Assembly: GCF_032444005.1 (NCBI RefSeq)
Contig: NC_091288.1
Coordinates: forward strand, 201,872,001 to 201,936,000
Length of the DNA stretch: 64,000 bases
DNA from: Ranitomeya imitator
Lineage: Eukaryota
Direction: 5' to 3'
Part shown: one piece after another, positions 2,162-54,548 of the stretch
How the letters are laid out: every line of letters begins with the position of its first letter
How positions within the stretch are numbered: position 1 is the stretch's first letter
The notes under the pieces: generated by a model
What the model was told of the DNA's origin: nothing
Seen by the model: only the letters and a program-made list of their open reading frames with translations
Database searches by the model: none
Made by a program: the position numbers and the translations under genes

Positions 2162-2191
2162 TTTGGGGTGAGGAGCGGAGCACGGANNNNN

Positions 2192-2750
<559 letters not shown>

Positions 2751-11437: not shown

Positions 11438-12366
11438 AATCATACAGCTCTGCGGGGAGGAGGCGGTGGCACTGATCATACAGCTCTGTGGGGAGGAGGT
11501 GGTGGCTCTGATCATACAGCTCTGCGGGGAGGAGGTGGTGGCTCTGATCATACAGCTCTGTGGGGAGAAGGTGGTGGCACTGATCAAACAGCTCTGCTGG
11601 GGAGGAGGTGGCTCTGATCATACAGCTCTGTGGGGAGAGGTGGTGGCACTGATCATACAGCTCTGCTGGGGAGGAGGTGGTTGCTCTGATCATACAGCTC
11701 TGCGGGGAGGAGGTAGTGGCACTGATCATACAGCTCTGCGGGGAGGAGGTAGTGGCTCTGATCATACAGCTCTGCGGGGAGAATGTGATGGCTCTGATCA
11801 TACAGCTCTGCTGGGGAGGAGGTGGTGGCTCTGATCATACAGCTCTGTGGGGAGAAGGTGGTTGCTCTGATCATACAGCTCTGCGGGGAGGAGGTAGTGG
11901 CACTGATAATACAGCTCTGCGGGGAGGAGGTAGTGGCACTGATCATACAGCTCTGTGGGGAGAAGGTGGTTGCTCTGATCATACAGCTCTGCGAGGAGGA
12001 GGTGATGGCACTGATCATACAGCTCTGCGGGGAGGAGGTGGTGGCACTGATCATACAGCTCTGTGGGGAGAAGGTGGTTGCTCTGATCATACAGCTCTGC
12101 GGGGAGGAGGTGGTGGCACTGATCATACAGCTCTGCGAGGAGGAGGTGGTGGCACTGATCATACAGCTCTGCGGGGAGTGGGTGATGGCACTGATCATAC
12201 AGCTCTGCGGGGAGGAGGTGGTGGCACTGATCATACAGCTCTGCGGGGAGGAGGTGGTGGCACTGCTCATACAGCTCTGCGGGGAGTGGGTGATGGCACT
12301 GATCATACAGCTCTGCTGGGAGGAGGTGTTGGCACTGATCATACAGCTCTGCGGGGAGGAGGTGGT
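11438..12366 (-). repeat. 36-bp HDE minisatellite directly 3' of the H1 stem-loop, about 26 units
   Basis: First unit is the H1 spacer plus HDE itself. Confidence 0.97.
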
Positions 12367-12382
12367 GGCTCTTATAAGAGCC
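12367..12382 (-). terminator. H1 stem-loop GGCTCT-TATA-AGAGCC (also 33155, 53867), followed by HDE CAGAGCTGTA
   Basis: Stem canonical, loop UAUA; AGAGCTGTA is complementary to the vertebrate U7 5' end UACAGCUCU. Confidence 0.93.
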
Positions 12383-12410: not shown

Positions 12411-13049
12411 TTATTTCTTAGCCGCGGGCTTCTTGGCTTTCGCAGCCTTCTTAGCCGGACTCTTGGCGGGTTTGGCCGCCTTCTTAGCCGGACTCTTCGT
12501 CACCTTCTTGGGCTTGGGAGCGGCTTTCGGCTTTTTGGGGCTCTTGGCCGCTTTCTTGGCAGCTGCGGGCTTCTTGGCCTTTTTCGGGCTCTTCTTGGCC
12601 GCGGTCGGAGCCTTCTTGGGCTTCTTCGGAGATTTGGCGGCTTTCTTGGCAGCAGCGGGTTTCTTAGATTTGGCCGCAGCTGCTGGCTTCTTCTTGGCCA
12701 CTTTGTCCTTCGTCTCCTGCTTCTTGTTCAGCTTGAAGGACCCGGAGGCGCCGCTGCCCTTCACCTGGAGGAGGGCGCCCTTGGTGACCAGAGACTTGAC
12801 GGCCAGCTTCAGGCGGCTGTTGTTCTTCTCTACATCGTATCCTCCGGCAGACAGAGCCTTCTTCAGGGCGGCCAGAGACACCCCGCTGCGCTCCTTGGAG
12901 GCGGACACGGCTTTCACGATCAGCTCGGAGACGCTGGGGCCGGAGGGTTTATTGCTCTTCTTGGCAGCAGATTTCTTCGGCTGCTTCTTGGATTTGGCGG
13001 CCGGTTCTGCGGGAGGGGGAGCGGCGGCTGGCGCGGTCTCTGCCATCAT
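12411..13049 (-). CDS. H1: Linker histone H1 (212 aa from first of two adjacent ATGs), canonical Lys-rich tail
   Basis: Globular domain [13 protein letters not shown]...[14 protein letters not shown] and K/A/P-rich tail ending AKKPAAKK. Confidence 0.97.
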
Positions 13050-20534: not shown

Positions 20535-22365
20535 CTAAAGACAGAAAATCGTGTGGAGAAGAGACTGTGCTGTGTGGCCTTATATAGTCTGCTGCTCCGC
20601 CCTCCTCTCCTGTCATTGGATGACTCTGAAGCTGGCCAATGGGGAAGAGTCTTGAGGAACCGCCAATGAGCTGCCGAGGGCGGAGCTTATTATTGCTCCT
20701 TGCTCAAATTAGTTTCTCACCCAATAGAAAACGTTCGCTTTGGACCGAATAGATAAGGGGTGAAAACAGATATTTGTCTTGGAGCAGAAGGAAGTGCAGA
20801 AATATTCTGTTGATTTGTAGTTTGCACTTGTTGAATTTGTGTCTACTATCAGCCATAAATTGCACTGACAGTCTGGTGGGTGAGGGGTTAATCCCTGTCA
20901 GTGCTTCTCCTCCGCTCCATCTGCACAGGAGGCGGCTCCTCACTCACCCGCTTATTACCCTGTGCAGATTCCCTGTGGTGTCCGCGCTGATCCTATCACA
21001 GCCTGACTGAGACAAGTCTCCTATGTTCTGCCCGGAGCCTGATGTGACGCTGCCGGGTCCCGGGTGGGGGAAGTCGCCGCTTCTGTATTGTATGATACAA
21101 TATTGTTCTGCTCCAGGAAGACATCCAGGCCTCTCTTGAACCCCTCGACTGAGTTCGCCATCACCACCTCCTCAGGCAAGCAATTCCAGATTCTCACCGC
21201 CCTAACAGTAAAGAATCCTCTTCTATGTTGGTGGAAAAACCTTCTCTCCTCCAGACGCAAAGAATGCCCCCTTGTGCCCGTGGCCTTGGTATAAACCTTG
21301 GTATAAACAGATCCTCAGCGAGATATTTCTATTGTCCCCTTATATACTTATACATGGTTATTAGATCGCCCCTCAGTCGTCTTTTTCTAGACTAAATAAT
21401 CCTAATTTCGCTAATCTATCTGGGTATTGTAGTTCTCAATAGAATTGTAGTTCTCAATACCCAGATAGTGGTAATGTTCTGAGCAGGGACACTCCGCAAT
21501 CTTCTACACATGATCGTACATTTCCCATCACAGAGGGATCTGCTGGGAAGGGCAGAATTGGTCTTCCCTGAAATGTCTCTTGTAGGATACGTCCCTGACC
21601 AGTATATCGTCTGCACAGTACTGATTGTGACGGGAAAGGGACGATCTGATCGTCTCCAGGTCAGGCACACGGGCACATCACAGCATGTGGAGAACACGAA
21701 TCAGTCTCTATATCTATGAGTGGAAACAGGAGCGAATACTGCACCGCTAACCTGGAAATCTGCAGACTCCTGTGTGGGATGTAAGAGAGCAATGATCGCT
21801 CAACACAAGCAGATTTCCCGATATCGGTCCTGGGAGCACGTGTCATATGAAGACAAAGGACGGAAAAAAGCGGGAACTTTAAACTTTTTACCATTGGAAA
21901 CATTAGCTCCTCCCTCTGCTGATTGGCTGAACACAGGACGGTTAGGGGGGTTTGAATTTCCCGCCGCTTCTAAATGTAATGACGTCATTTACACTGTAAA
22001 AAGAATTCAATTAGGCTCTAGATCAACTCCACCGACCACCACAAATGGCTCCTGTTAACGGAGAAAGGAGAGTAATGAACGAGACCCCAGAATGCCGAGA
22101 TCTGTGCAGCAAGGGGTTAAATAAGTCCCTGAATACACATCAACTCACTGAGCAATGCCCAGATTATTCCTGAGGTTTTCTCACCATCTCCCTCGTCATC
22201 AGACGCAGAGCCCCGGGCGGTGCGAGCAGACACCTCGGGGAGACGGGAGAGGACACCGGAGCAGTGTGGGTGGCTCTTATAGTGAGGGTGTAGGTGGCTC
22301 TTATAGGGAGGGTGTGGGTGGCTCTTAGAAGAGCCTTTGGGGTGAGGAGCGGAGCACGGANNNNN

Positions 22366-22842
<477 letters not shown>

Positions 22843-31613: not shown

Positions 31614-33154
31614 AATCATACAGCTCTGCGGGGAGGAGGCGGTGGCACTGATCATACAGCTCTGTGGGGAGGAGGTGGTGGCTCTGATCATACAGCTCTG
31701 TGGGGAGAAGGTGGTTGCTCTGATCATACAGCTCTGCGGGGAGGAGGTAGTGGCACTGATAATACAGCTCTGCGGGGAGGAGGTAGTGGCACTGATCATA
31801 CAGCTCTGTGGGGAGAAGGTGGTTGCTCTGATCATACAGCTCTGCGAGGAGGAGGTGATGGCACTGATCATACAGCTCTGCGGGGAGGAGGTGGTGGCAC
31901 TGATCATACAGCTCTGCGGGGAGGAGGTGGTGGCTCTGATCATACAGCTCTGTGGGGAGAGGTGGTGGCACTGATCATACAGCTCTGCTGGGGAGGAGGT
32001 GGTTGCTCTGATCATACAGCTCTGCGGGGAGGAGGTAGTGGCACTGATCATACAGCTCTGCGGGGAGGAGGTAGTGGCTCTGATCATACAGCTCTGCGGG
32101 GAGAATGTGATGGCTCTGATCATACAGCTCTGCTGGGGAGGAGGTGGTGGCTCTGATCATACAGCTCTGTGGGGAGAAGGTGGTTGCTCTGATCATACAG
32201 CTCTGCGGGGAGGAGGTAGTGGCACTGATAATACAGCTCTGCGGGGAGGAGGTAGTGGCACTGATCATACAGCTCTGTGGGGAGAAGGTGGTTGCTCTGA
32301 TCATACAGCTCTGCGAGGAGGAGGTGATGGCACTGATCATACAGCTCTGCGGGGAGGAGGTGGTGGCACTGATCATACAGCTCTGTGGGGAGAAGGTGGT
32401 TGCTCTGATCATACAGCTCTGCGGGGAGGAGGTGGTGGCACTGATCATACAGCTCTGCGAGGAGGAGGTGGTGGCACTGATCATACAGCTCTGCGGGGAG
32501 TGGGTGATGGCACTGATCATACAGCTCTGCGGGGAGGAGGTGGTGGCACTGATCATACAGCTCTGCGGGGAGGAGGTGGTGGCACTGATCATACAGCTCT
32601 GCGGGGAGGAGGTAGTGGCTCTGATCATACAGCTCTGCGGGGAGAATGTGATGGCTCTGATCATACAGCTCTGCTGGGGAGGAGGTGGTGGCTCTGATCA
32701 TACAGCTCTGTGGGGAGAAGGTGGTTGCTCTGATCATACAGCTCTGCGGGGAGGAGGTAGTGGCACTGATAATACAGCTCTGCGGGGAGGAGGTAGTGGC
32801 ACTGATCATACAGCTCTGCGGGGAGGAGGTGGTGGCACTGATCATACAGCTCTGTGGGGAGAAGGTGGTTGCTCTGATCATACAGCTCTGCGGGGAGGAG
32901 GTGGTGGCACTGATCATACAGCTCTGCGAGGAGGAGGTGGTGGCACTGATCATACAGCTCTGCGGGGAGTGGGTGATGGCACTGATCATACAGCTCTGCG
33001 GGGAGGAGGTGGTGGCACTGATCATACAGCTCTGCGGGGAGGTGGTGGCACTGATCATACAGCCCTGTGGGGAGGAGGTAGTGGCACTGATCATACAGCT
33101 CTGCTGGGAGGAGGTGTTGGCACTGATCATACAGCTCTGCGGGGAGGAGGTAGT
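31614..33154 (-). repeat. 36-bp HDE minisatellite 3' of H1, about 43 units
   Basis: Expanded allele. Confidence 0.97.
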
Positions 33155-33179
33155 GGCTCTTATAAGAGCCTTTGTGGTA

Positions 33180-33836
33180 TCAGAACAGGGGCTGCAGCTT
33201 ATTTCTTAGCCGCGGGCTTCTTGGCTTTCGCAGCCTTCTTAACCGACTCTTGGCGGGTTTGGCCGCCTTCTTAGCCGGACTCTTCGTCACCTTCTTGGGC
33301 TTGGGAGCGGCTTTCGGCTTTTTGGGGCTCTTGGCCGCTTTCTTGGCAGCTGCGGGCTTCTTGGCCTTTTTCGGGCTCTTCTTGGCCGCGGTCGGAGCCT
33401 TCTTGGGCTTCTTCGGAGATTTGGCGGCTTTCTTGGCAGCAGCGGGTTTCTTAGGTTTGGCCGCAGCTGCTGGCTTCTTCTTGGCCACTTTGTCCTTCGT
33501 CTCCTGCTTCTTGTTCAGCTTGAAGGACCCGGAGGCGCCGCTGCCCTTCACCTGGAGGAGGGCGCCCTTGGTGACCAGAGACTTGACGGCCAGCTTCAGG
33601 CGGCTGTTGTTCTTCTCTACATCGTATCCTCCGGCAGACAGAGCCTTCTTCAGGGCGGCCAGAGACACCCCGCTGCGCTCCTTGGAGGCGGACACGGCTT
33701 TCACGATCAGCTCGGAGACGCTGGGGCCGGAGGGTTTATTGCTCTTCTTGGCAGCAGATTTCTTCGGCTGCTTCTTGGATTTGGCGGCCGGTTCTGCGGG
33801 AGGGGGAGCGGCGGCTGGCGCGGTCTCTGCCATCAT
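33180..33836 (-). CDS. H1: Linker histone H1, frameshifted C-terminus (218 aa) ending [21 protein letters not shown]
   Basis: ttagccggactc (unit 1) becomes ttaaccgactc; new TGA at 33180-33182 lies before the stem-loop at 33155-33170. Confidence 0.93.
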
Positions 33837-36800
33837 GTGCTGCGGAAAAACAAAATGAAAATATTTCCTGATAGGAAGGAAAACACTGAGGCCGGAGCTG
33901 GAGGCGCCTGTTATATGTACAGGCTTACTGCGCACTGATTGGCTGCTGAGCTGCACCGTTCTGAGCTTCTATTGGCTGACACTGGACATAAACCCCGCCT
34001 CCTCCCAGCTGAGTCCGGGTGAAGCACCGCTCTCTCCTTGTGCTTCCCTGCCCGGGATAAAAGCCCTTTACCGGCTAACACCGGACAGCAGAGCGCGCTT
34101 CCTCCATCGCCTCTCCTTCTCCAACATCTCCACCGGCCATTTGTAGCCGTCACTAGCAGAGATGCCGGGAAAGAGCGGAGAACAAATCCCGGGATCATCG
34201 CCGCCGTCCTCCCGATCTGCACCTCACTGTGTACCGGGGAGATAAATCTGCTGCGGGAGCTCGTTCCTCCTATTCCCGGCTCTTGTCACCATCACAGGGA
34301 TCTTTACTCCAATGTCTATCGTACAGGGAGCTGATTGTACGATGTGGGGACGAGCTGGAGCTGCTGAGAACCCAGAAGGGTAACACAGGCGACGGCCTCC
34401 GCTGACTGCCCCCTCCCTGACCTGTGATATCACTGTACCCCGTATGTGCAGAGGATTGGGGGGACACGTGTTCCACATCAGTAGATGATCCACATCGGTG
34501 GCTGAGTGCAATCACCTGCCTGATATCTTGTCTTAGTGGTGGGAAAGAGCTCTGATGAGGCGACAGCTGCACAGTGCGACTCCCCAACCAAACACATGAA
34601 CATCTCAGGGGAGAAAACTGAAATATTAACGGATGTATATGACCCCCACTATTATGCAAAAGGGGAATATTGGGAGAAGAGCGGAGACACAAAATCCAGC
34701 GTCTACACAGAGAACACAGCTGTATATAGTATATATAGTGCACAGCATCACATCTGCACAGCCCAGATCAGCAGTGTAATAAGTGCCACTGATAATAGAG
34801 GAGAGGGTACAGTATATACAGCAGAGTGTACAGTATATAGAGCAGAGTACACAGTATATAGAGCAGAGTGTACAGTATATAGACCAGAGTGTACAGTATA
34901 CAGAGCAGTGTGTGCAGTATATACAGCAGAGTGTACAGTATATAGAGCAGTGTATAGTATATACAGCAGTGTACAGTATATAGAGCAGTGTATAGTATAG
35001 TATAGTGCGGTGTGTACAGTATATAGAGCGGTGTGTGCAGTATATACAGCAGAGTACACTGTATGTAGACCAGAGTGTACAGTATATACAGCAGAGTACA
35101 CAGTATATAGACCAGAGTGTACAGTATACAGAGCAGTGTGTGCAGTATATGCAGCAGAGTACACAGTATATAGAGCAGTGTACAGTATATACAGCAGTGT
35201 ACAGTATTTACAGCAATGTACAGTAAATAGACCAGAGTGTACAGTATATAGAGCAGTGTACAGTAGTGCGGTGTGTGCAGTATATAGAGCAGAGTATACA
35301 GTATATACAGCAGAGTACAGTATATAGAGCAGAGTGCACAGTATAAAGAGCTGTGTGTACAGTATATACAGGAGAGGGTACAGTACATAGAGCAGTGTGT
35401 ACAGTATATAGAGCACTGTACACAGTATATACAGCAGTGTGTACAGTATGTAGAGGAGAGTGTAGAGTATGTACAGCAGTGTGTACAGTATATAGATCAT
35501 TGTGTGCATTATATAGAGCAAAGCGTTCAGTATATAGAGCAGTGTGCAGTATAGTGCGGTGTATATAGAGCAGTGTATACAGTATACTATTATTATTTTT
35601 TTATATAGCACCATTGATTCCATGGTGCTGTACATGAGCGGTGACCTCCCAAAGTGTAGAGGAACAATTCAAGAGTGTGGGGTACTTATTTCAGAATTCG
35701 GGGGGGGGGGGGGGGTTAACGGCCCGGGGGGGGGGCATTTTTTTGAGGGGCATTACTTGTGGGCAAGGTCAATTTGGGGGGTCACAGCTCAACCCGGTTT
35801 TGGGCTATCAACCCCAAATTTTCAGGGTGTGTAGAGTACCCCTAGCGAACCAATAGTGTAAAAAATTGAGGGTGGCACTTTGAGGGCACCCCAAAACTAA
35901 TGCCCCCCCACCCCCAAAAAAAAAAAAAAAAAAAAATGCCCCCCTCCCATTAACCTAAAAATTCTGAAAAAAAAATAGCCCAACTAATGAATTGTTCCTC
36001 TACACACTATGAAAATTTGACGTCGATAGCCCCAATCTGGGCTGAGCAGTTACCCCCCAAAGCTGCCCTGCCCATTGAAGCCTATCGCGCGCAGGGTCAC
36101 TGCCCAGCCTGGTTTGTGCCTACCGACCCCACATTTTCAGGGTGTGTAGAGGAACAATTCAAGAGTGTCGGGTAATTTGTTCAGAAGTTTGGGGGTCGGG
36201 AAGGGGGGCATATTTTTGGGGTGATCTCAAAATGCCCCCCACATTTTTGCAGCACTGGTCCACTAGAGCTATGGGTACGCTACACACCCTGAAAATGTGT
36301 GGTTGATAGCCACAAACAGGGCTGAGCAGAGACTCCCCAAAGTGACCCTGCCCATTGAAGTCTATGGTGCGCAAGGTCACTGCTCAGCCCGATTTGGGTC
36401 TGTCGACCACAAATTCTCAGGGTGTGTAGAGGAACACTTTAAGAGTGTGTGGTAATTTTTTTCAGAATGTTTTGGGTCAACCGGGGCATTTTTTGGTGGG
36501 GCACAACGTTTGGGTTGCCCTCAAAAGCCCCCCAAAGTTTTACACCACACCTCCTTTGCTACATATCGAAGTATTGGCAATGCTGATGAGTATACTGGAC
36601 CCCGCGATCACTTGGCTGGATGTGGGAATGTGCAGAGGAAAAATGAGGATAATGAACGGGATTACAGCAGCACCCCACATGCGGATGGTGGTGCCGAGAA
36701 AATCTAGTACATCAGCCTCATTCTGGAGAGGTGCTGACATGAAGGATTGATCAGCTCTCCGTGAGAGAGAGCGAGAAAGAAAGAGAGAGAGAAAGCCTGA

Positions 36801-41502: not shown

Positions 41503-43294
41503 TTATATAGTCTGCTGCTCCGCCCTCCTCTCCTGTCATTGGATGACTCTGAAGCTGGCCAATGGGGAAGAGTCTTGAGGAACCGCCAATGAGCTGCCGA
41601 GGGCGGAGCCTATTATTGCTCCTTGCTCAAATTAGTTTCTCACCCAATAGAAAACGTTCGCTTTGGACCGAATAGATAAGGGGTGAAAACAGATATTTGT
41701 CTTGGAGCAGAAGGAAGTGCAGAAATATTCTGTTGATTTGTAGTTTGCACTTGTTGAATTTGTGTCTACTATCAGCCATAAATTGCACTGACAGTCTGGT
41801 GGGTGAGGGGTTAATCCCTGTCAGTGCTTCTCCTCCGCTCCATCTGCACAGGAGGCGGCTCCTCACTCACCCGCTTATTACCCTGTGTAGATTCCCTGTG
41901 GTGTCCGCGCTGATCCTATCACAGCCTAACTGAGACAAGTCTCCTATGTTCTGCCCGGAGCCTGATGTGACGCTGCCGGGTCCCGGGTGGGGGAAGTCGC
42001 CGCTTCTGTATTGTATGATACAATATTGTTCTGCTCCAGGAAGACATCCAGGCCTCTCTTGAACCCCTCGACTGAGTTCGCCATCACCACCTCCTCAGGC
42101 AAGCAATTCCAGATTCTCACCGCCCTAACAGTAAAGAATCCTCTTCTATGTTGGTGGAAAAACCTTCTCTCCTCCAGACGCAAAGAATGCCCCCTTGTGC
42201 CCGTGGCCTTGGTATAAACCTTGGTATAAACAGATCCTCAGCGAGATATTTCTATTGTCCCCTTATATACTTATACATGGTTATTAGATCGCCCCTCAGT
42301 CGTCTTTTTCTAGACTAAATAATCCTAATTTCGCTAATCTATCTGGGTATTGTAGTTCTCAATACCCAGATAGTGGTAATGTTCTGAGCAGGGACACTCC
42401 GCAATCTTCTACACATGATCGTACATTTCCCATCACAGAGGGATCTGCTGGGAAGGGCAGAATTGGTCTTCCCTGAAATGTCTCTTGTAGGATATGTCCC
42501 TGACCAGTATATCGTCTGCACAGTACTGATTGTGACGGGAAAGGGACGATCTGATCGTCTCCAGGTCAGGCACACGGGCACATCACAGCATGTGGAGAAC
42601 ACGAATCAGTCTCTATATCTATGAGTGGAAACAGGAGCGAATACTGCACCGCTAACCTGGAAATCTGCAGACTCCTGTGTGGGATGTAAGAGAGCAATGA
42701 TCGCTCAACACAAGCAGATTTCCCGATATCGGTCCTGGGAGCACGTGTCATATGAAGACAAAGGACGGAAAAAAGCGGGAACTTTAAACTTTTTACCATT
42801 GGAAACATTAGCTCCTCCCTCTGCTGATTGGCTGAACACAGGACGGTTAGGGGGGTTTGAATTTCCCGCCGCTTCTAAATGTAATGACGTCATTTACACT
42901 GTAAAAAGAATTCAATTAGGCTCTAGATCAACTCCACCGACCACCACAAATGGCTCCTGTTAACGGAGAAAGGAGAGTAATGAACGAGACCCCAGAATGC
43001 CGAGATCTGTGCAGCAAGGGGTTAAATAAGTCCCTGAATACACATCAACTCACTGAGCAATGCCCAGATTATTCCTGAGGTTTTCTCACCATCTCCCTCG
43101 TCATCAGACGCAGAGCCCCGGGCGGTGCGAGCAGAAACCTCGGGGAGACGGGAGAGGACACCGGAGCAGTGTGGGTGGCTCTTATAGTGAGGGTGTAGGT
43201 GGCTCTTATAGGGAGGGTGTGGGTGGCTCTTATAGGGAGGGTGTGGGTGGCTCTTAGAAGAGCCTTTGGGGTGAGGAGCGGAGCACGGANNNNN

Positions 43295-43771
<477 letters not shown>

Positions 43772-52324: not shown

Positions 52325-53866
52325 TAATCATACAGCTCTGCGGGGAGGAGGCGGTGGCACTGATCATACAGCTCTGTGGGGAGGAGGTGGTGGCTCTGAT
52401 CATACAGCTCTGTGGGGAGAAGGTGGTTGCTCTGATCATACAGCTCTGCGGGGAGGAGGTAGTGGCACTGATAATACAGCTCTGCGGGGAGGAGGTAGTG
52501 GCACTGATCATACAGCTCTGTGGGGAGAAGGTGGTTGCTCTGATCATACAGCTCTGCGAGGAGGAGGTGATGGCACTGATCATACAGCTCTGCGGGGAGG
52601 AGGTGGTGGCACTGATCATACAGCTCTGCGGGGAGGAGGTGGTGGCTCTGATCATACAGCTCTGTGGGGAGAGGTGGTGGCACTGATCATACAGCTCTGC
52701 TGGGGAGGAGGTGGTTGCTCTGATCATACAGCTCTGCGGGGAGGAGGTAGTGGCACTGATCATACAGCTCTGCGGGGAGGAGGTAGTGGCTCTGATCATA
52801 CAGCTCTGCGGGGAGAATGTGATGGCTCTGATCATACAGCTCTGCTGGGGAGGAGGTGGTGGCTCTGATCATACAGCTCTGTGGGGAGAAGGTGGTTGCT
52901 CTGATCATACAGCTCTGCGGGGAGGAGGTAGTGGCACTGATAATACAGCTCTGCGGGGAGGAGGTAGTGGCACTGATCATACAGCTCTGTGGGGAGAAGG
53001 TGGTTGCTCTGATCATACAGCTCTGCGAGGAGGAGGTGATGGCACTGATCATACAGCTCTGCGGGGAGGAGGTGGTGGCACTGATCATACAGCTCTGTGG
53101 GGAGAAGGTGGTTGCTCTGATCATACAGCTCTGCGGGGAGGAGGTGGTGGCACTGATCATACAGCTCTGCGAGGAGGAGGTGGTGGCACTGATCATACAG
53201 CTCTGCGGGGAGTGGGTGATGGCACTGATCATACAGCTCTGCGGGGAGGAGGTGGTGGCACTGATCATACAGCTCTGCGGGGAGGAGGTGGTGGCACTGA
53301 TCATACAGCTCTGCGGGGAGGAGGTAGTGGCTCTGATCATACAGCTCTGCGGGGAGAATGTGATGGCTCTGATCATACAGCTCTGCTGGGGAGGAGGTGG
53401 TGGCTCTGATCATACAGCTCTGTGGGGAGAAGGTGGTTGCTCTGATCATACAGCTCTGCGGGGAGGAGGTAGTGGCACTGATAATACAGCTCTGCGGGGA
53501 GGAGGTAGTGGCACTGATCATACAGCTCTGCGGGGAGGAGGTGGTGGCACTGATCATACAGCTCTGTGGGGAGAAGGTGGTTGCTCTGATCATACAGCTC
53601 TGCGGGGAGGAGGTGGTGGCACTGATCATACAGCTCTGCGAGGAGGAGGTGGTGGCACTGATCATACAGCTCTGCGGGGAGTGGGTGATGGCACTGATCA
53701 TACAGCTCTGCGGGGAGGAGGTGGTGGCACTGATCATACAGCTCTGCGGGGAGGTGGTGGCACTGATCATACAGCCCTGTGGGGAGGAGGTAGTGGCACT
53801 GATCATACAGCTCTGCTGGGAGGAGGTGTTGGCACTGATCATACAGCTCTGCGGGGAGGAGGTGGT
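52325..53866 (-). repeat. 36-bp HDE minisatellite 3' of H1, about 43 units
   Basis: Nearly identical to the unit 2 allele. Confidence 0.97.
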
Positions 53867-53891
53867 GGCTCTTATAAGAGCCTTTGTGGTA

Positions 53892-54548
53892 TCAGAACAG
53901 GGGCTGCAGCTTATTTCTTAGCCGCGGGCTTCTTGGCTTTCGCAGCCTTCTTAACCGACTCTTGGCGGGTTTGGCCGCCTTCTTAGCCGGACTCTTCGTC
54001 ACCTTCTTGGGCTTGGGAGCGGCTTTCGGCTTTTTGGGGCTCTTGGCCGCTTTCTTGGCAGCTGCGGGCTTCTTGGCCTTTTTCGGGCTCTTCTTGGCCG
54101 CGGTCGGAGCCTTCTTGGGCTTCTTCGGAGATTTGGCGGCTTTCTTGGCAGCAGCGGGTTTCTTAGGTTTGGCCGCAGCTGCTGGCTTCTTCTTGGCCAC
54201 TTTGTCCTTCGTCTCCTGCTTCTTGTTCAGCTTGAAGGACCCGGAGGCGCCGCTGCCCTTCACCTGGAGGAGGGCGCCCTTGGTGACCAGAGACTTGACG
54301 GCCAGCTTCAGGCGGCTGTTGTTCTTCTCTACATCGTATCCTCCGGCAGACAGAGCCTTCTTCAGGGCGGCCAGAGACACCCCGCTGCGCTCCTTGGAGG
54401 CGGACACGGCTTTCACGATCAGCTCGGAGACGCTGGGGCCGGAGGGTTTATTGCTCTTCTTGGCAGCAGATTTCTTCGGCTGCTTCTTGGATTTGGCGGC
54501 CGGTTCTGCGGGAGGGGGAGCGGCGGCTGGCGCGGTCTCTGCCATCAT
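53892..54548 (-). CDS. H1: Linker histone H1, same frameshifted C-terminus (218 aa)
   Basis: Same lesion at about 53951-53960 as in unit 2. Confidence 0.93.

What the first reader, a model, noticed from the sequence alone, without database searches (positions are those of the whole stretch)
33180..33260. H1 frameshift allele turns the Lys-rich tail end into an Arg-rich tail and is shared by two units
A 1-bp deletion plus a substitution changes [16 protein letters not shown] to [22 protein letters not shown] (AAG codons read as AGA/AGG); the new stop is still upstream of the intact stem-loop, so the mRNA should be translatable. Identical at 53892-53970, so not a random read error. A frameshift converting Lys to Arg codons in an H1 tail is the mechanism proposed for Arg-rich protamine-like proteins in tunicates (established hypothesis); this may be an incipient vertebrate example spreading by concerted evolution (inference). 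These copies also carry an S-to-P change (AKPKK).
Basis: partly seen in the sequence, partly recalled or inferred. Interest (0 to 1): 0.8.

Follow-up and report, generated by a model that had tools for sequence, protein, structure and literature searches.

The report
Frameshifted histone H1 copy, duplicated once
Two neighbouring copies of a frog histone H1 gene share a small deletion that rewrites the last 15 amino acids into an arginine- and leucine-rich end. It looks like an ordinary passenger variant in a large gene family, not the start of a protamine-like protein.

Summary
The sequence observation is correct. The window holds three about 20.7-kb histone repeat units of a poison frog; the closest H1 proteins are from Ranitomeya. 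The H1 genes of units 2 and 3 carry a 1-bp deletion plus a C>T change two bases away. Residues 197-211 (15 aa, 7 Lys) become 21 new residues (7 Arg, 2 Lys, 5 Leu, 1 Phe), ending at a TGA upstream of the stem-loop.

The evolutionary reading is not supported.
- Units 2 and 3 differ at only 12 sites in about 17 kb outside satellite DNA. "Shared by two units" therefore means one mutation plus one recent unit duplication, not spread.
- Any -1 shift in an H1 tail gives an open Arg-rich frame. Annotated H1 proteins of another Ranitomeya and two fishes contain such stretches.
- Only 7% of the protein changes, tail charge is kept (+42 to +44), and Arg stays at 4%.
- The new stop lies 9 nt from the stem-loop (28 nt in the in-frame copy), inside the terminating ribosome's footprint.
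- Public DNA and RNA contigs from organism A (same or a sister species) show only the in-frame allele. No public predicted protein has the new tail.

An assembly artefact is not excluded but looks unlikely. The scan has no other note of this frameshift. Low interest.

The parts
33180..33833 (-). H1 coding sequence of unit 2, frameshift allele (217 codons plus TGA)
   Evidence: ORF list and translation. Pfam PF00538 linker histone domain at residues 37-107, E 8.6e-23.
33242..33245 (-). The lesion. Plus-strand A at 33242 (G in unit 1 at 12454) and CCG at 33243-33245 (CCGG in unit 1 at 12455-12458). On the coding strand this is TCCGGCT > TCGGTT.
   Evidence: Alignment A1; plus-strand reads. Contigs of public runs show G at 33242 and an extra G after 33244.
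33180..33182 (-). New stop codon TGA, 9 nt upstream of the stem-loop
   Evidence: Contigs of runs X2 and X1 read TGT here (33180 T>A on the plus strand).
33199..33201 (-). Ancestral TAA stop, now out of frame; 28 nt upstream of the stem-loop
33155..33170 (-). Histone 3' stem-loop (6-bp stem, loop UAUA), intact
   Evidence: RF00032 match at 33129-33175, 28.4 bits, below the gathering score of 34. Coordinates.
33265..33284 (-). Upstream twin of the mutated motif (AAGAGTCCGGCTAAGAAGGC), unchanged in units 2/3. It serves as an internal control against a context-specific sequencing error.
   Evidence: Alignment columns 706-725 versus 739-758; sequence.
33455..33455 (-). Codon 127 site: CCT (Pro) in units 2/3, TCT (Ser) in unit 1. 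Pro is ancestral.
   Evidence: Relatives P0001-P0004, P0010 and P0011 all read KPKK or PKK here. The X2 contig matches Pro.
53892..54545 (-). H1 coding sequence of unit 3, the same frameshift allele (lesion at 53954-53957, stem-loop at 53867-53882)
12411..13046 (-). H1 coding sequence of unit 1, in-frame reference copy (211 aa; stem-loop at 12367-12382)

Best explanation
This is a real but minor variant copy of an ordinary replication-dependent, cluster-type linker histone H1 gene. One complex mutation (loss of one C plus a C>T two bases away) arose near the 3' end of one H1 copy in a histone array with many units. A recent duplication of the whole 20.7-kb unit, by unequal crossing-over, then produced the second copy. 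Because H1 tails are written in AAG/AAA, GCx and CCx codons, a -1 shift automatically yields Arg, Leu and Pro with almost no stops, so the Arg-rich tail is a by-product of codon content. The change replaces 15 of 211 residues, keeps the tail's positive charge and removes one of five S-P-x-K motifs. It also moves the stop to 9 nt from the stem-loop, which should if anything lower output from these copies. With many intact H1 copies elsewhere in the genome, the variant is effectively neutral or slightly deleterious and simply rides with its unit. Shown here: the sequence change, its ancestry, the sister relation of the units and the generic nature of the frame. Inferred: reality in the DNA of the animal, neutrality, and lowered expression.
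For: The deletion and substitution are identical in units 2 and 3 and absent from unit 1. Units 2 and 3 differ at 12 positions in about 16.9 kb outside the satellite, and the only indel lies in a poly-C run. Unit 1 versus unit 2 is about 99.07% identical. All related frog H1 proteins end in the in-frame ...KSPAKKA[A/T]KAKKPAAKK, so the frameshift is derived. The -1 frame of the in-frame copy's own tail region is open for 75 codons and Arg-rich. That translation matches Arg-rich stretches in annotated H1 proteins of Ranitomeya imitator (P0007, 54% over 50 aa, E 6e-12), carp (P0103) and a sucker (P0109). Composition: Lys 62 to 57, Arg 2 to 9, C-terminal-domain net charge +42 to +44. All six H4 ORFs are full length, and the H3 and H2A ORFs are listed intact in every unit, so the assembly is not indel-prone. 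An identical 20-mer 33 nt upstream is untouched. Earlier notes place histone clusters up to 14.6 Mb away on this piece and on other pieces, so H1 copies are many.
Against: No public run was listed for a 60-mer spanning the lesion, although only 3 sampled words were tested. In one DNA and two RNA runs, the only contig over the site carries the in-frame allele at 100% of depth (201/201, 7/7, 17.9/17.9). The same runs do resolve other H1 variants down to about 25% of depth. No protein among 5.8 billion carries the new tail, and neither exact protein is on record. So reality in DNA rests on the assembly alone. These runs also differ from all three window units at 33180 and 33581. They may therefore come from a sister species or another H1 subfamily, and contigs drop rare variants, so this evidence against is weak.
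Confidence: 0.65

Rival explanations
1. Assembly or consensus artefact. The animal's DNA has the in-frame sequence in these units, and the deletion plus substitution was introduced during read correction or polishing. It was then repeated because units 2 and 3 are almost identical and share the same read pile.
For: The allele is absent from every public contig set examined and from all public predicted proteins. Units 2 and 3 are 99.93% identical outside satellite, so they are not independent. The lost base is one of a CC pair inside a CpG-containing CCGG.
Against: The change is complex, a deletion plus a transition 2 bp away. The identical 20-mer context 33 nt upstream is unchanged in the same units. 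All H4, H3 and H2A ORFs in the window are intact. The only other indel between units 2 and 3 outside satellite lies in a run of at least 19 C. The runs examined may not be the assembled individual or even the same species (33581 and 33180 differ in all contigs).
Confidence: 0.2
2. Incipient Arg-rich, protamine-like H1 allele. The frameshift protein is made, binds or compacts chromatin differently, perhaps in sperm, and is being spread through the array by concerted evolution.
For: The promoter region, globular domain, 85% of the tail, the stem-loop and the downstream element are all intact. An in-frame stop exists before the stem-loop. Literature derives protamine-like proteins from a C-terminal frameshift in a sperm-specific H1.
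Against: The variant is in only two sister units, and no conversion tract is seen on a different unit background. It was not seen in RNA contigs. The gene is a cluster-type replication-dependent H1, not a sperm-specific one. The new tail is 21 aa with 7 Arg and 5 Leu, overall Arg is 4%, and Lys is still 26%. The stop sits 9 nt from the stem-loop, whereas human histone mRNAs range from 28 to 67 nt and the ribosome covers 15-17 nt. The same frame appears as presumed broken copies or annotation errors in other vertebrates.
Confidence: 0.05
3. Real variant whose copies are effectively dead. Termination 9 nt before the stem-loop forces the ribosome into the SLBP-bound hairpin, so the mRNA is poorly translated or unstable. 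These two H1 genes would then be young pseudogenes kept only because their units carry working H2A, H2B, H3 and H4 genes.
For: The spacer is 9 nt, against 28 nt in the in-frame copy. The shortest human spacer is 28 nt, and a terminating ribosome protects 15-17 nt 3' of the stop (PMC9745837). Only the in-frame allele is seen in RNA contigs.
Against: No experiment known to me tests so short a spacer. RNA contigs drop rare variants and may be from another species. Human H1.4 frameshift proteins from a gene of the same type have been studied in cells (PMC13385758).
Confidence: 0.1

Closest known systems
Replication-dependent somatic-type linker histone H1 genes of frog histone clusters (annotated as histone H1.01-like or H1B-like in Ranitomeya, Phyllobates and Xenopus)
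   Same: Intronless gene inside a tandem H2A/H2B/H3/H4/H1 repeat. It has a PF00538 globular domain, a Lys/Ala/Pro tail with S-P-x-K motifs, a 3' stem-loop and a downstream purine-rich element. It is 91-99% identical to Ranitomeya and Phyllobates H1 over the aligned parts.
   Different: The last 15 residues are replaced by 21 out-of-frame residues, and the stop is moved to 9 nt from the stem-loop.
Tunicate protamine-like sperm proteins, proposed to derive from a sperm-specific H1 by a frameshift in the C-terminal tail (Lewis et al. 2004, as cited in PMC9917458 and PMC8799248)
   Same: The same formal event: a shift of frame in a Lys-rich H1 tail converts Lys codons to Arg codons.
   Different: The tunicate case is a fixed, sperm-specific gene with a dominant Arg-rich domain. 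Here two sister copies of a general cluster H1 carry a 21-aa end with 7 Arg, there is no evidence of expression or fixation, and the protein stays Lys-rich.
Human H1.4 (H1-4/HIST1H1E) C-terminal frameshifts of Rahman syndrome
   Same: Small indels in the tail-coding part of a replication-dependent H1 gene give a protein with a shared divergent C-terminal end (PMC13385758).
   Different: The human variants all use the other frame, which is acidic and cuts tail charge from +43 to +6 for the c.430dupG variant. The frog variant uses the Arg-rich frame, affects only the last 15 residues and keeps charge at +42 to +44.
Frameshifted H1 models in public vertebrate annotations (Ranitomeya imitator P0007; Cyprinus carpio P0103; Xyrauchen texanus P0109)
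   Same: These H1 proteins have tails that switch to the Arg/Pro/Gln-rich -1 frame. They are the best matches to the -1 frame translation of this window's own H1.
   Different: Their shifts lie further upstream and give longer Arg-rich stretches. Whether they are real copies or assembly or annotation errors is unknown.

Membership tests
Linker histone H1 (replication-dependent, cluster type) | Winged-helix globular domain (Pfam PF00538) | tested here: met
   PF00538 at residues 37-107, 80.8 bits against a cutoff of 22.4, in both alleles.
Linker histone H1 (replication-dependent, cluster type) | Lys/Ala/Pro-rich disordered C-terminal domain with S/T-P-x-K motifs | tested here: met
   C-terminal domain of 105 aa with 44 Lys in the in-frame copy, and 111 aa with 39 Lys plus 7 Arg in the frameshift copy. 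There are five S-P-x-K motifs against four, read from the translations.
Linker histone H1 (replication-dependent, cluster type) | mRNA 3' end formed at a conserved stem-loop instead of a poly(A) signal; gene lies in a histone repeat | tested here: met
   RF00032 match of 28.4 bits, E 2.3e-6, below the Rfam gathering score of 34. H4, H3, H2A and H2B ORFs lie in the same 20.7-kb unit.
H1-derived protamine-like sperm nuclear basic protein (tunicate type) | Arg-rich region created by a frameshift in an H1 C-terminal tail | tested here: met
   A 1-bp deletion converts Lys codons to Arg codons over the last 21 residues.
H1-derived protamine-like sperm nuclear basic protein (tunicate type) | Arg is a dominant residue of the protein or of a large domain | tested here: not met
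   9 Arg in 217 residues (4%) against 57 Lys. The new tail is 33% Arg and 24% Leu.
H1-derived protamine-like sperm nuclear basic protein (tunicate type) | Sperm- or testis-specific expression and presence in sperm chromatin | not testable with these tools
   Run tissues are not given. RNA contigs of two runs show only the in-frame allele. The promoter is identical to that of the ordinary copy.
H1-derived protamine-like sperm nuclear basic protein (tunicate type) | A fixed, separate gene in the species | tested here: inconclusive
   Present in 2 of the 3 units in the window, and those two are sister duplicates. Absent from public contigs and proteins. The rest of the genome could not be read.
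Rahman-type H1 tail frameshift | Shift into the acidic frame with a large loss of tail charge | tested here: not met
   The frog shift is into the Arg-rich frame. The Glu-rich frame is the other one. Net charge is kept. Definition from PMC13385758.

The most novel reading that the evidence does not exclude
The frameshift copies are transcribed and translated, in germ cells among others. They would give a linker histone whose extreme C-terminus is an Arg/Leu-rich amphipathic patch that changes chromatin binding or condensate behaviour. That would be a living vertebrate snapshot of the first step on the proposed H1-to-protamine-like path, still polymorphic within a tandem array.
Probability: 0.04. 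Interest if true: 0.7.

Novelty: new member of a known kind. Interest (0 to 1): 0.2.

Why it matters
If the allele were expressed and selected, it would let one watch a Lys-to-Arg tail conversion of H1 inside a vertebrate, which bears on how protamine-like proteins arise. As it stands, it mainly illustrates two ordinary points. First, H1 tail codon content makes the -1 frame open and Arg-rich, so such alleles arise easily and recur in genome annotations. Second, large tandem histone arrays tolerate and duplicate slightly damaged copies. It is also a caution for annotation pipelines, which may report these copies as novel Arg-rich H1 variants.

Tried and rejected
1. I searched public runs with a 60-mer in which nearly every 31-mer spans the lesion. 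None was listed, but only 3 words were sampled, so the test is weak.
2. Read laying returned only Logan contigs, not raw reads, so allele frequency could not be measured. The laid runs also differ from all three window units at 33180 and 33581, so they may not be the same species or H1 subfamily.
3. An exact-sequence look-up of both H1 proteins found neither in the collection.
4. A tail-restricted protein search (residues 176-217) found only R. imitator P0004, which has the in-frame tail and a lost stop.
5. I tried to fetch the DNA of the R. variabilis and R. imitator H1 loci in order to count alleles and identify the species. No DNA was returned because the sample files are too large.
6. I looked for earlier scan notes on an H1 frameshift elsewhere in this genome. 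There were none, only notes on the H1-derived satellite.
7. I considered a templated origin of the mutated motif from elsewhere in the window. The 17-mer occurs only at the two H1 sites.
8. I considered a context-specific sequencing error. I rated it unlikely because the identical 20-mer 33 nt upstream is intact in the same units.

Full report
**What is there.** The window is a tandem histone gene array with a repeat of about 20.7 kb. It holds three units, each with H2B (partly masked as N), two H4, H3, H1 and H2A genes, and self-comparison confirms the repeat. The closest H1 proteins in public data are from Ranitomeya variabilis, R. imitator and Phyllobates terribilis at 91-99% identity over the aligned parts. 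This agrees with earlier notes of this scan that call the genome a poison frog, probably Ranitomeya. All three H1 genes lie on the minus strand. Both alleles have a normal linker-histone globular domain, PF00538, at residues 37-107.

Unit 1 (12411-13046) encodes 211 aa ending in the usual Lys-rich tail. Units 2 (33180-33833) and 3 (53892-54545) encode 217 aa. The alignment shows four differences inside the gene:
- a 5'UTR C>T;
- codon 127, TCT in unit 1 and CCT in units 2/3;
- loss of one C from TCCGG;
- a C>T two bases further on.

The last two turn residues 197-211 (15 aa, 7 Lys) into 21 new residues with 7 Arg, 2 Lys, 5 Leu and 1 Phe. The new TGA (33180-33182) precedes the stem-loop at 33155-33170. 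That hairpin is the same in all three copies and matches Rfam RF00032 at 28.4 bits. The mutated 17-mer occurs only at these two sites.

**Polarity of the changes.** Every related frog H1 retrieved ends in the in-frame ...KSPAKKA(A/T)KAKKPAAKK, so the frameshift is derived. Every one also has Pro at the position of residue 127. The "S-to-P change" is therefore really a P-to-S change private to unit 1.

**"Shared by two units" is one event, not two.** Most of the 40 mismatches between units 2 and 3 fall in misaligned satellite. Outside it they differ at 12 positions in about 16.9 kb (99.93% identity), and the single indel lies in a run of at least 19 C. Unit 1 versus unit 2 is about 99.07% identical. 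The simplest history is one mutation followed by one recent duplication of the whole unit. The lesion is not seen on a different unit background, so nothing here shows conversion-driven spread.

**The Arg-rich frame is a generic property.** Translating the in-frame copy one base out of register gives an open stretch of 75 codons that is very rich in Arg and Pro. The third frame is Glu-rich. That -1 translation finds its best matches in Arg-rich stretches of annotated H1 proteins:
- R. imitator P0007, 54% identity over 50 aa, E 6e-12;
- carp P0103;
- a sucker, P0109.

H1 models of a swallow and of Xenopus laevis also show Arg-rich ends. Frameshifted H1 copies with Arg tails are thus recurrent in vertebrate assemblies, whether as real broken copies or as errors.

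**Size of the effect.** Lys goes from 62 to 57 and Arg from 2 to 9. Net charge of the C-terminal domain goes from +42 to +44. One of five S-P-x-K motifs is lost (read). The protein remains a Lys-rich H1, not a protamine-like one. Human Rahman-syndrome H1.4 frameshifts use the other, acidic frame and cut tail charge from +43 to +6 for the c.430dupG variant (PMC13385758). By contrast, the frog change preserves charge.

**Translatability.** The spacer between stop codon and stem-loop falls from 28 nt to 9 nt. In human histone mRNAs it ranges from 28 to 67 nt, and decay intermediates place the 3' edge of the terminating ribosome 15-17 nt beyond the stop (PMC9745837). By inference, a ribosome reaching this TGA must invade the hairpin and the SLBP contact region. 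Output from these copies is therefore more likely lowered than normal. This was not tested here.

**Independent evidence for the allele.** Eighteen public runs hold 49-69% of the sampled words of the gene, but none was listed for a 60-mer spanning the lesion, where only 3 words were sampled. I laid the contigs of one DNA run and two RNA runs on 33100-33950. In each, the only contig across the site has G at 33242 and an extra G after 33244, which is the in-frame allele, at 100% of depth (201/201, 7/7, 17.9/17.9). A fourth run, X7, does not cover the site. The same runs resolve other H1 variants as separate contigs down to about a quarter of depth.

No protein among 5.8 billion has the new tail, and neither exact protein is on record. 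These negatives are weak for three reasons:
- contigs drop rare variants;
- the runs carry GCT where all window units have TCT (33581, Ala/Ser 85), as does R. imitator P0004;
- runs X2 and X1 read TGT for the TGA at 33180.

The runs may therefore come from a sister species or represent another H1 subfamily.

**Artefact or real?** Four points argue against an artefact:
- the change is complex, a deletion plus a transition;
- the identical 20-mer 33 nt upstream (33265-33284) is intact in the same units;
- all H4, H3 and H2A ORFs in the window are intact;
- indels between sister units are confined to satellite and a poly-C run.

Two points argue for an artefact. The two units are almost identical, so an error could be repeated. 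The allele has no support outside this assembly. I put the artefact at about 0.2.

**Verdict.**

| Reading | Probability |
|---|---|
| Real minor variant: one mutation plus one unit duplication, tolerated because the array holds many H1 copies | about 0.65 |
| Assembly or consensus artefact | about 0.2 |
| Real variant whose copies are effectively dead | about 0.1 |
| Incipient protamine-like allele | about 0.05 |

Histone clusters are noted up to 14.6 Mb away on the same piece and on other pieces, which supports the view that H1 copies are many. The incipient protamine-like reading remains formally possible but has no positive support. Novelty: a new instance of a known kind of event. Interest is low.

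Noticed in passing
window 33155-33170, 12367-12382, 53867-53882: The H1 stem-loop has the loop UAUA instead of the usual UUUC/UUUU and scores 28.4 bits, below Rfam's gathering score of 34. At the gathering threshold only the six H4 stem-loops in the window pass; those of H3, H2A, H2B and H1 do not.
   Followed up: partly
window 12667 (unit 1, codon 127): Unit 1 carries a private Pro-to-Ser change (AAKSKKP) relative to units 2/3 and all related frog H1 proteins. Each of the three copies therefore has its own derived coding change.
   Followed up: yes
window 33581 and 33180 (and the same sites in units 1 and 3): All three window units read TCT (Ser85), and TGA in the 3'UTR. Contigs of all four public runs read GCT (Ala85, as in R. 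imitator P0004), and runs X2 and X1 read TGT at 33180. On a TGT background, the same frameshift would have no stop before the stem-loop.
   Followed up: partly
protein P0004 (Ranitomeya imitator, public annotation): This annotated H1 has lost its stop codon. It reads on through the 3'UTR, the stem-loop and into the satellite (…AAKKKLQPLFCYHKGSYKSHHLLPAELYDQ…), the same downstream frame as the allele studied here.
   Followed up: no
protein P0007 (Ranitomeya imitator, public annotation): This H1 model switches to the Arg/Pro-rich -1 frame from about residue 163 and is fused to a full H3. It is either a second, independent frameshifted H1 copy in the genus or an assembly or annotation error.
   Followed up: partly
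window 32400-33150 and 53100-53860 (also 11438-12382): A 33/36-bp satellite starts directly after the H1 stem-loop and repeats the 3' arm plus the downstream element. It yields long spurious ORFs on both strands. Earlier notes of this scan already describe it.
   Followed up: no
window 38797: A poly-C run of at least 19 C differs in length by one base between units 2 and 3. It is the only indel between them outside satellite DNA.
   Followed up: partly
window 2187-2471, 22361-22645, 43290-43574: Three 285-base N blocks lie inside the H2B genes, one per unit.
   Followed up: no
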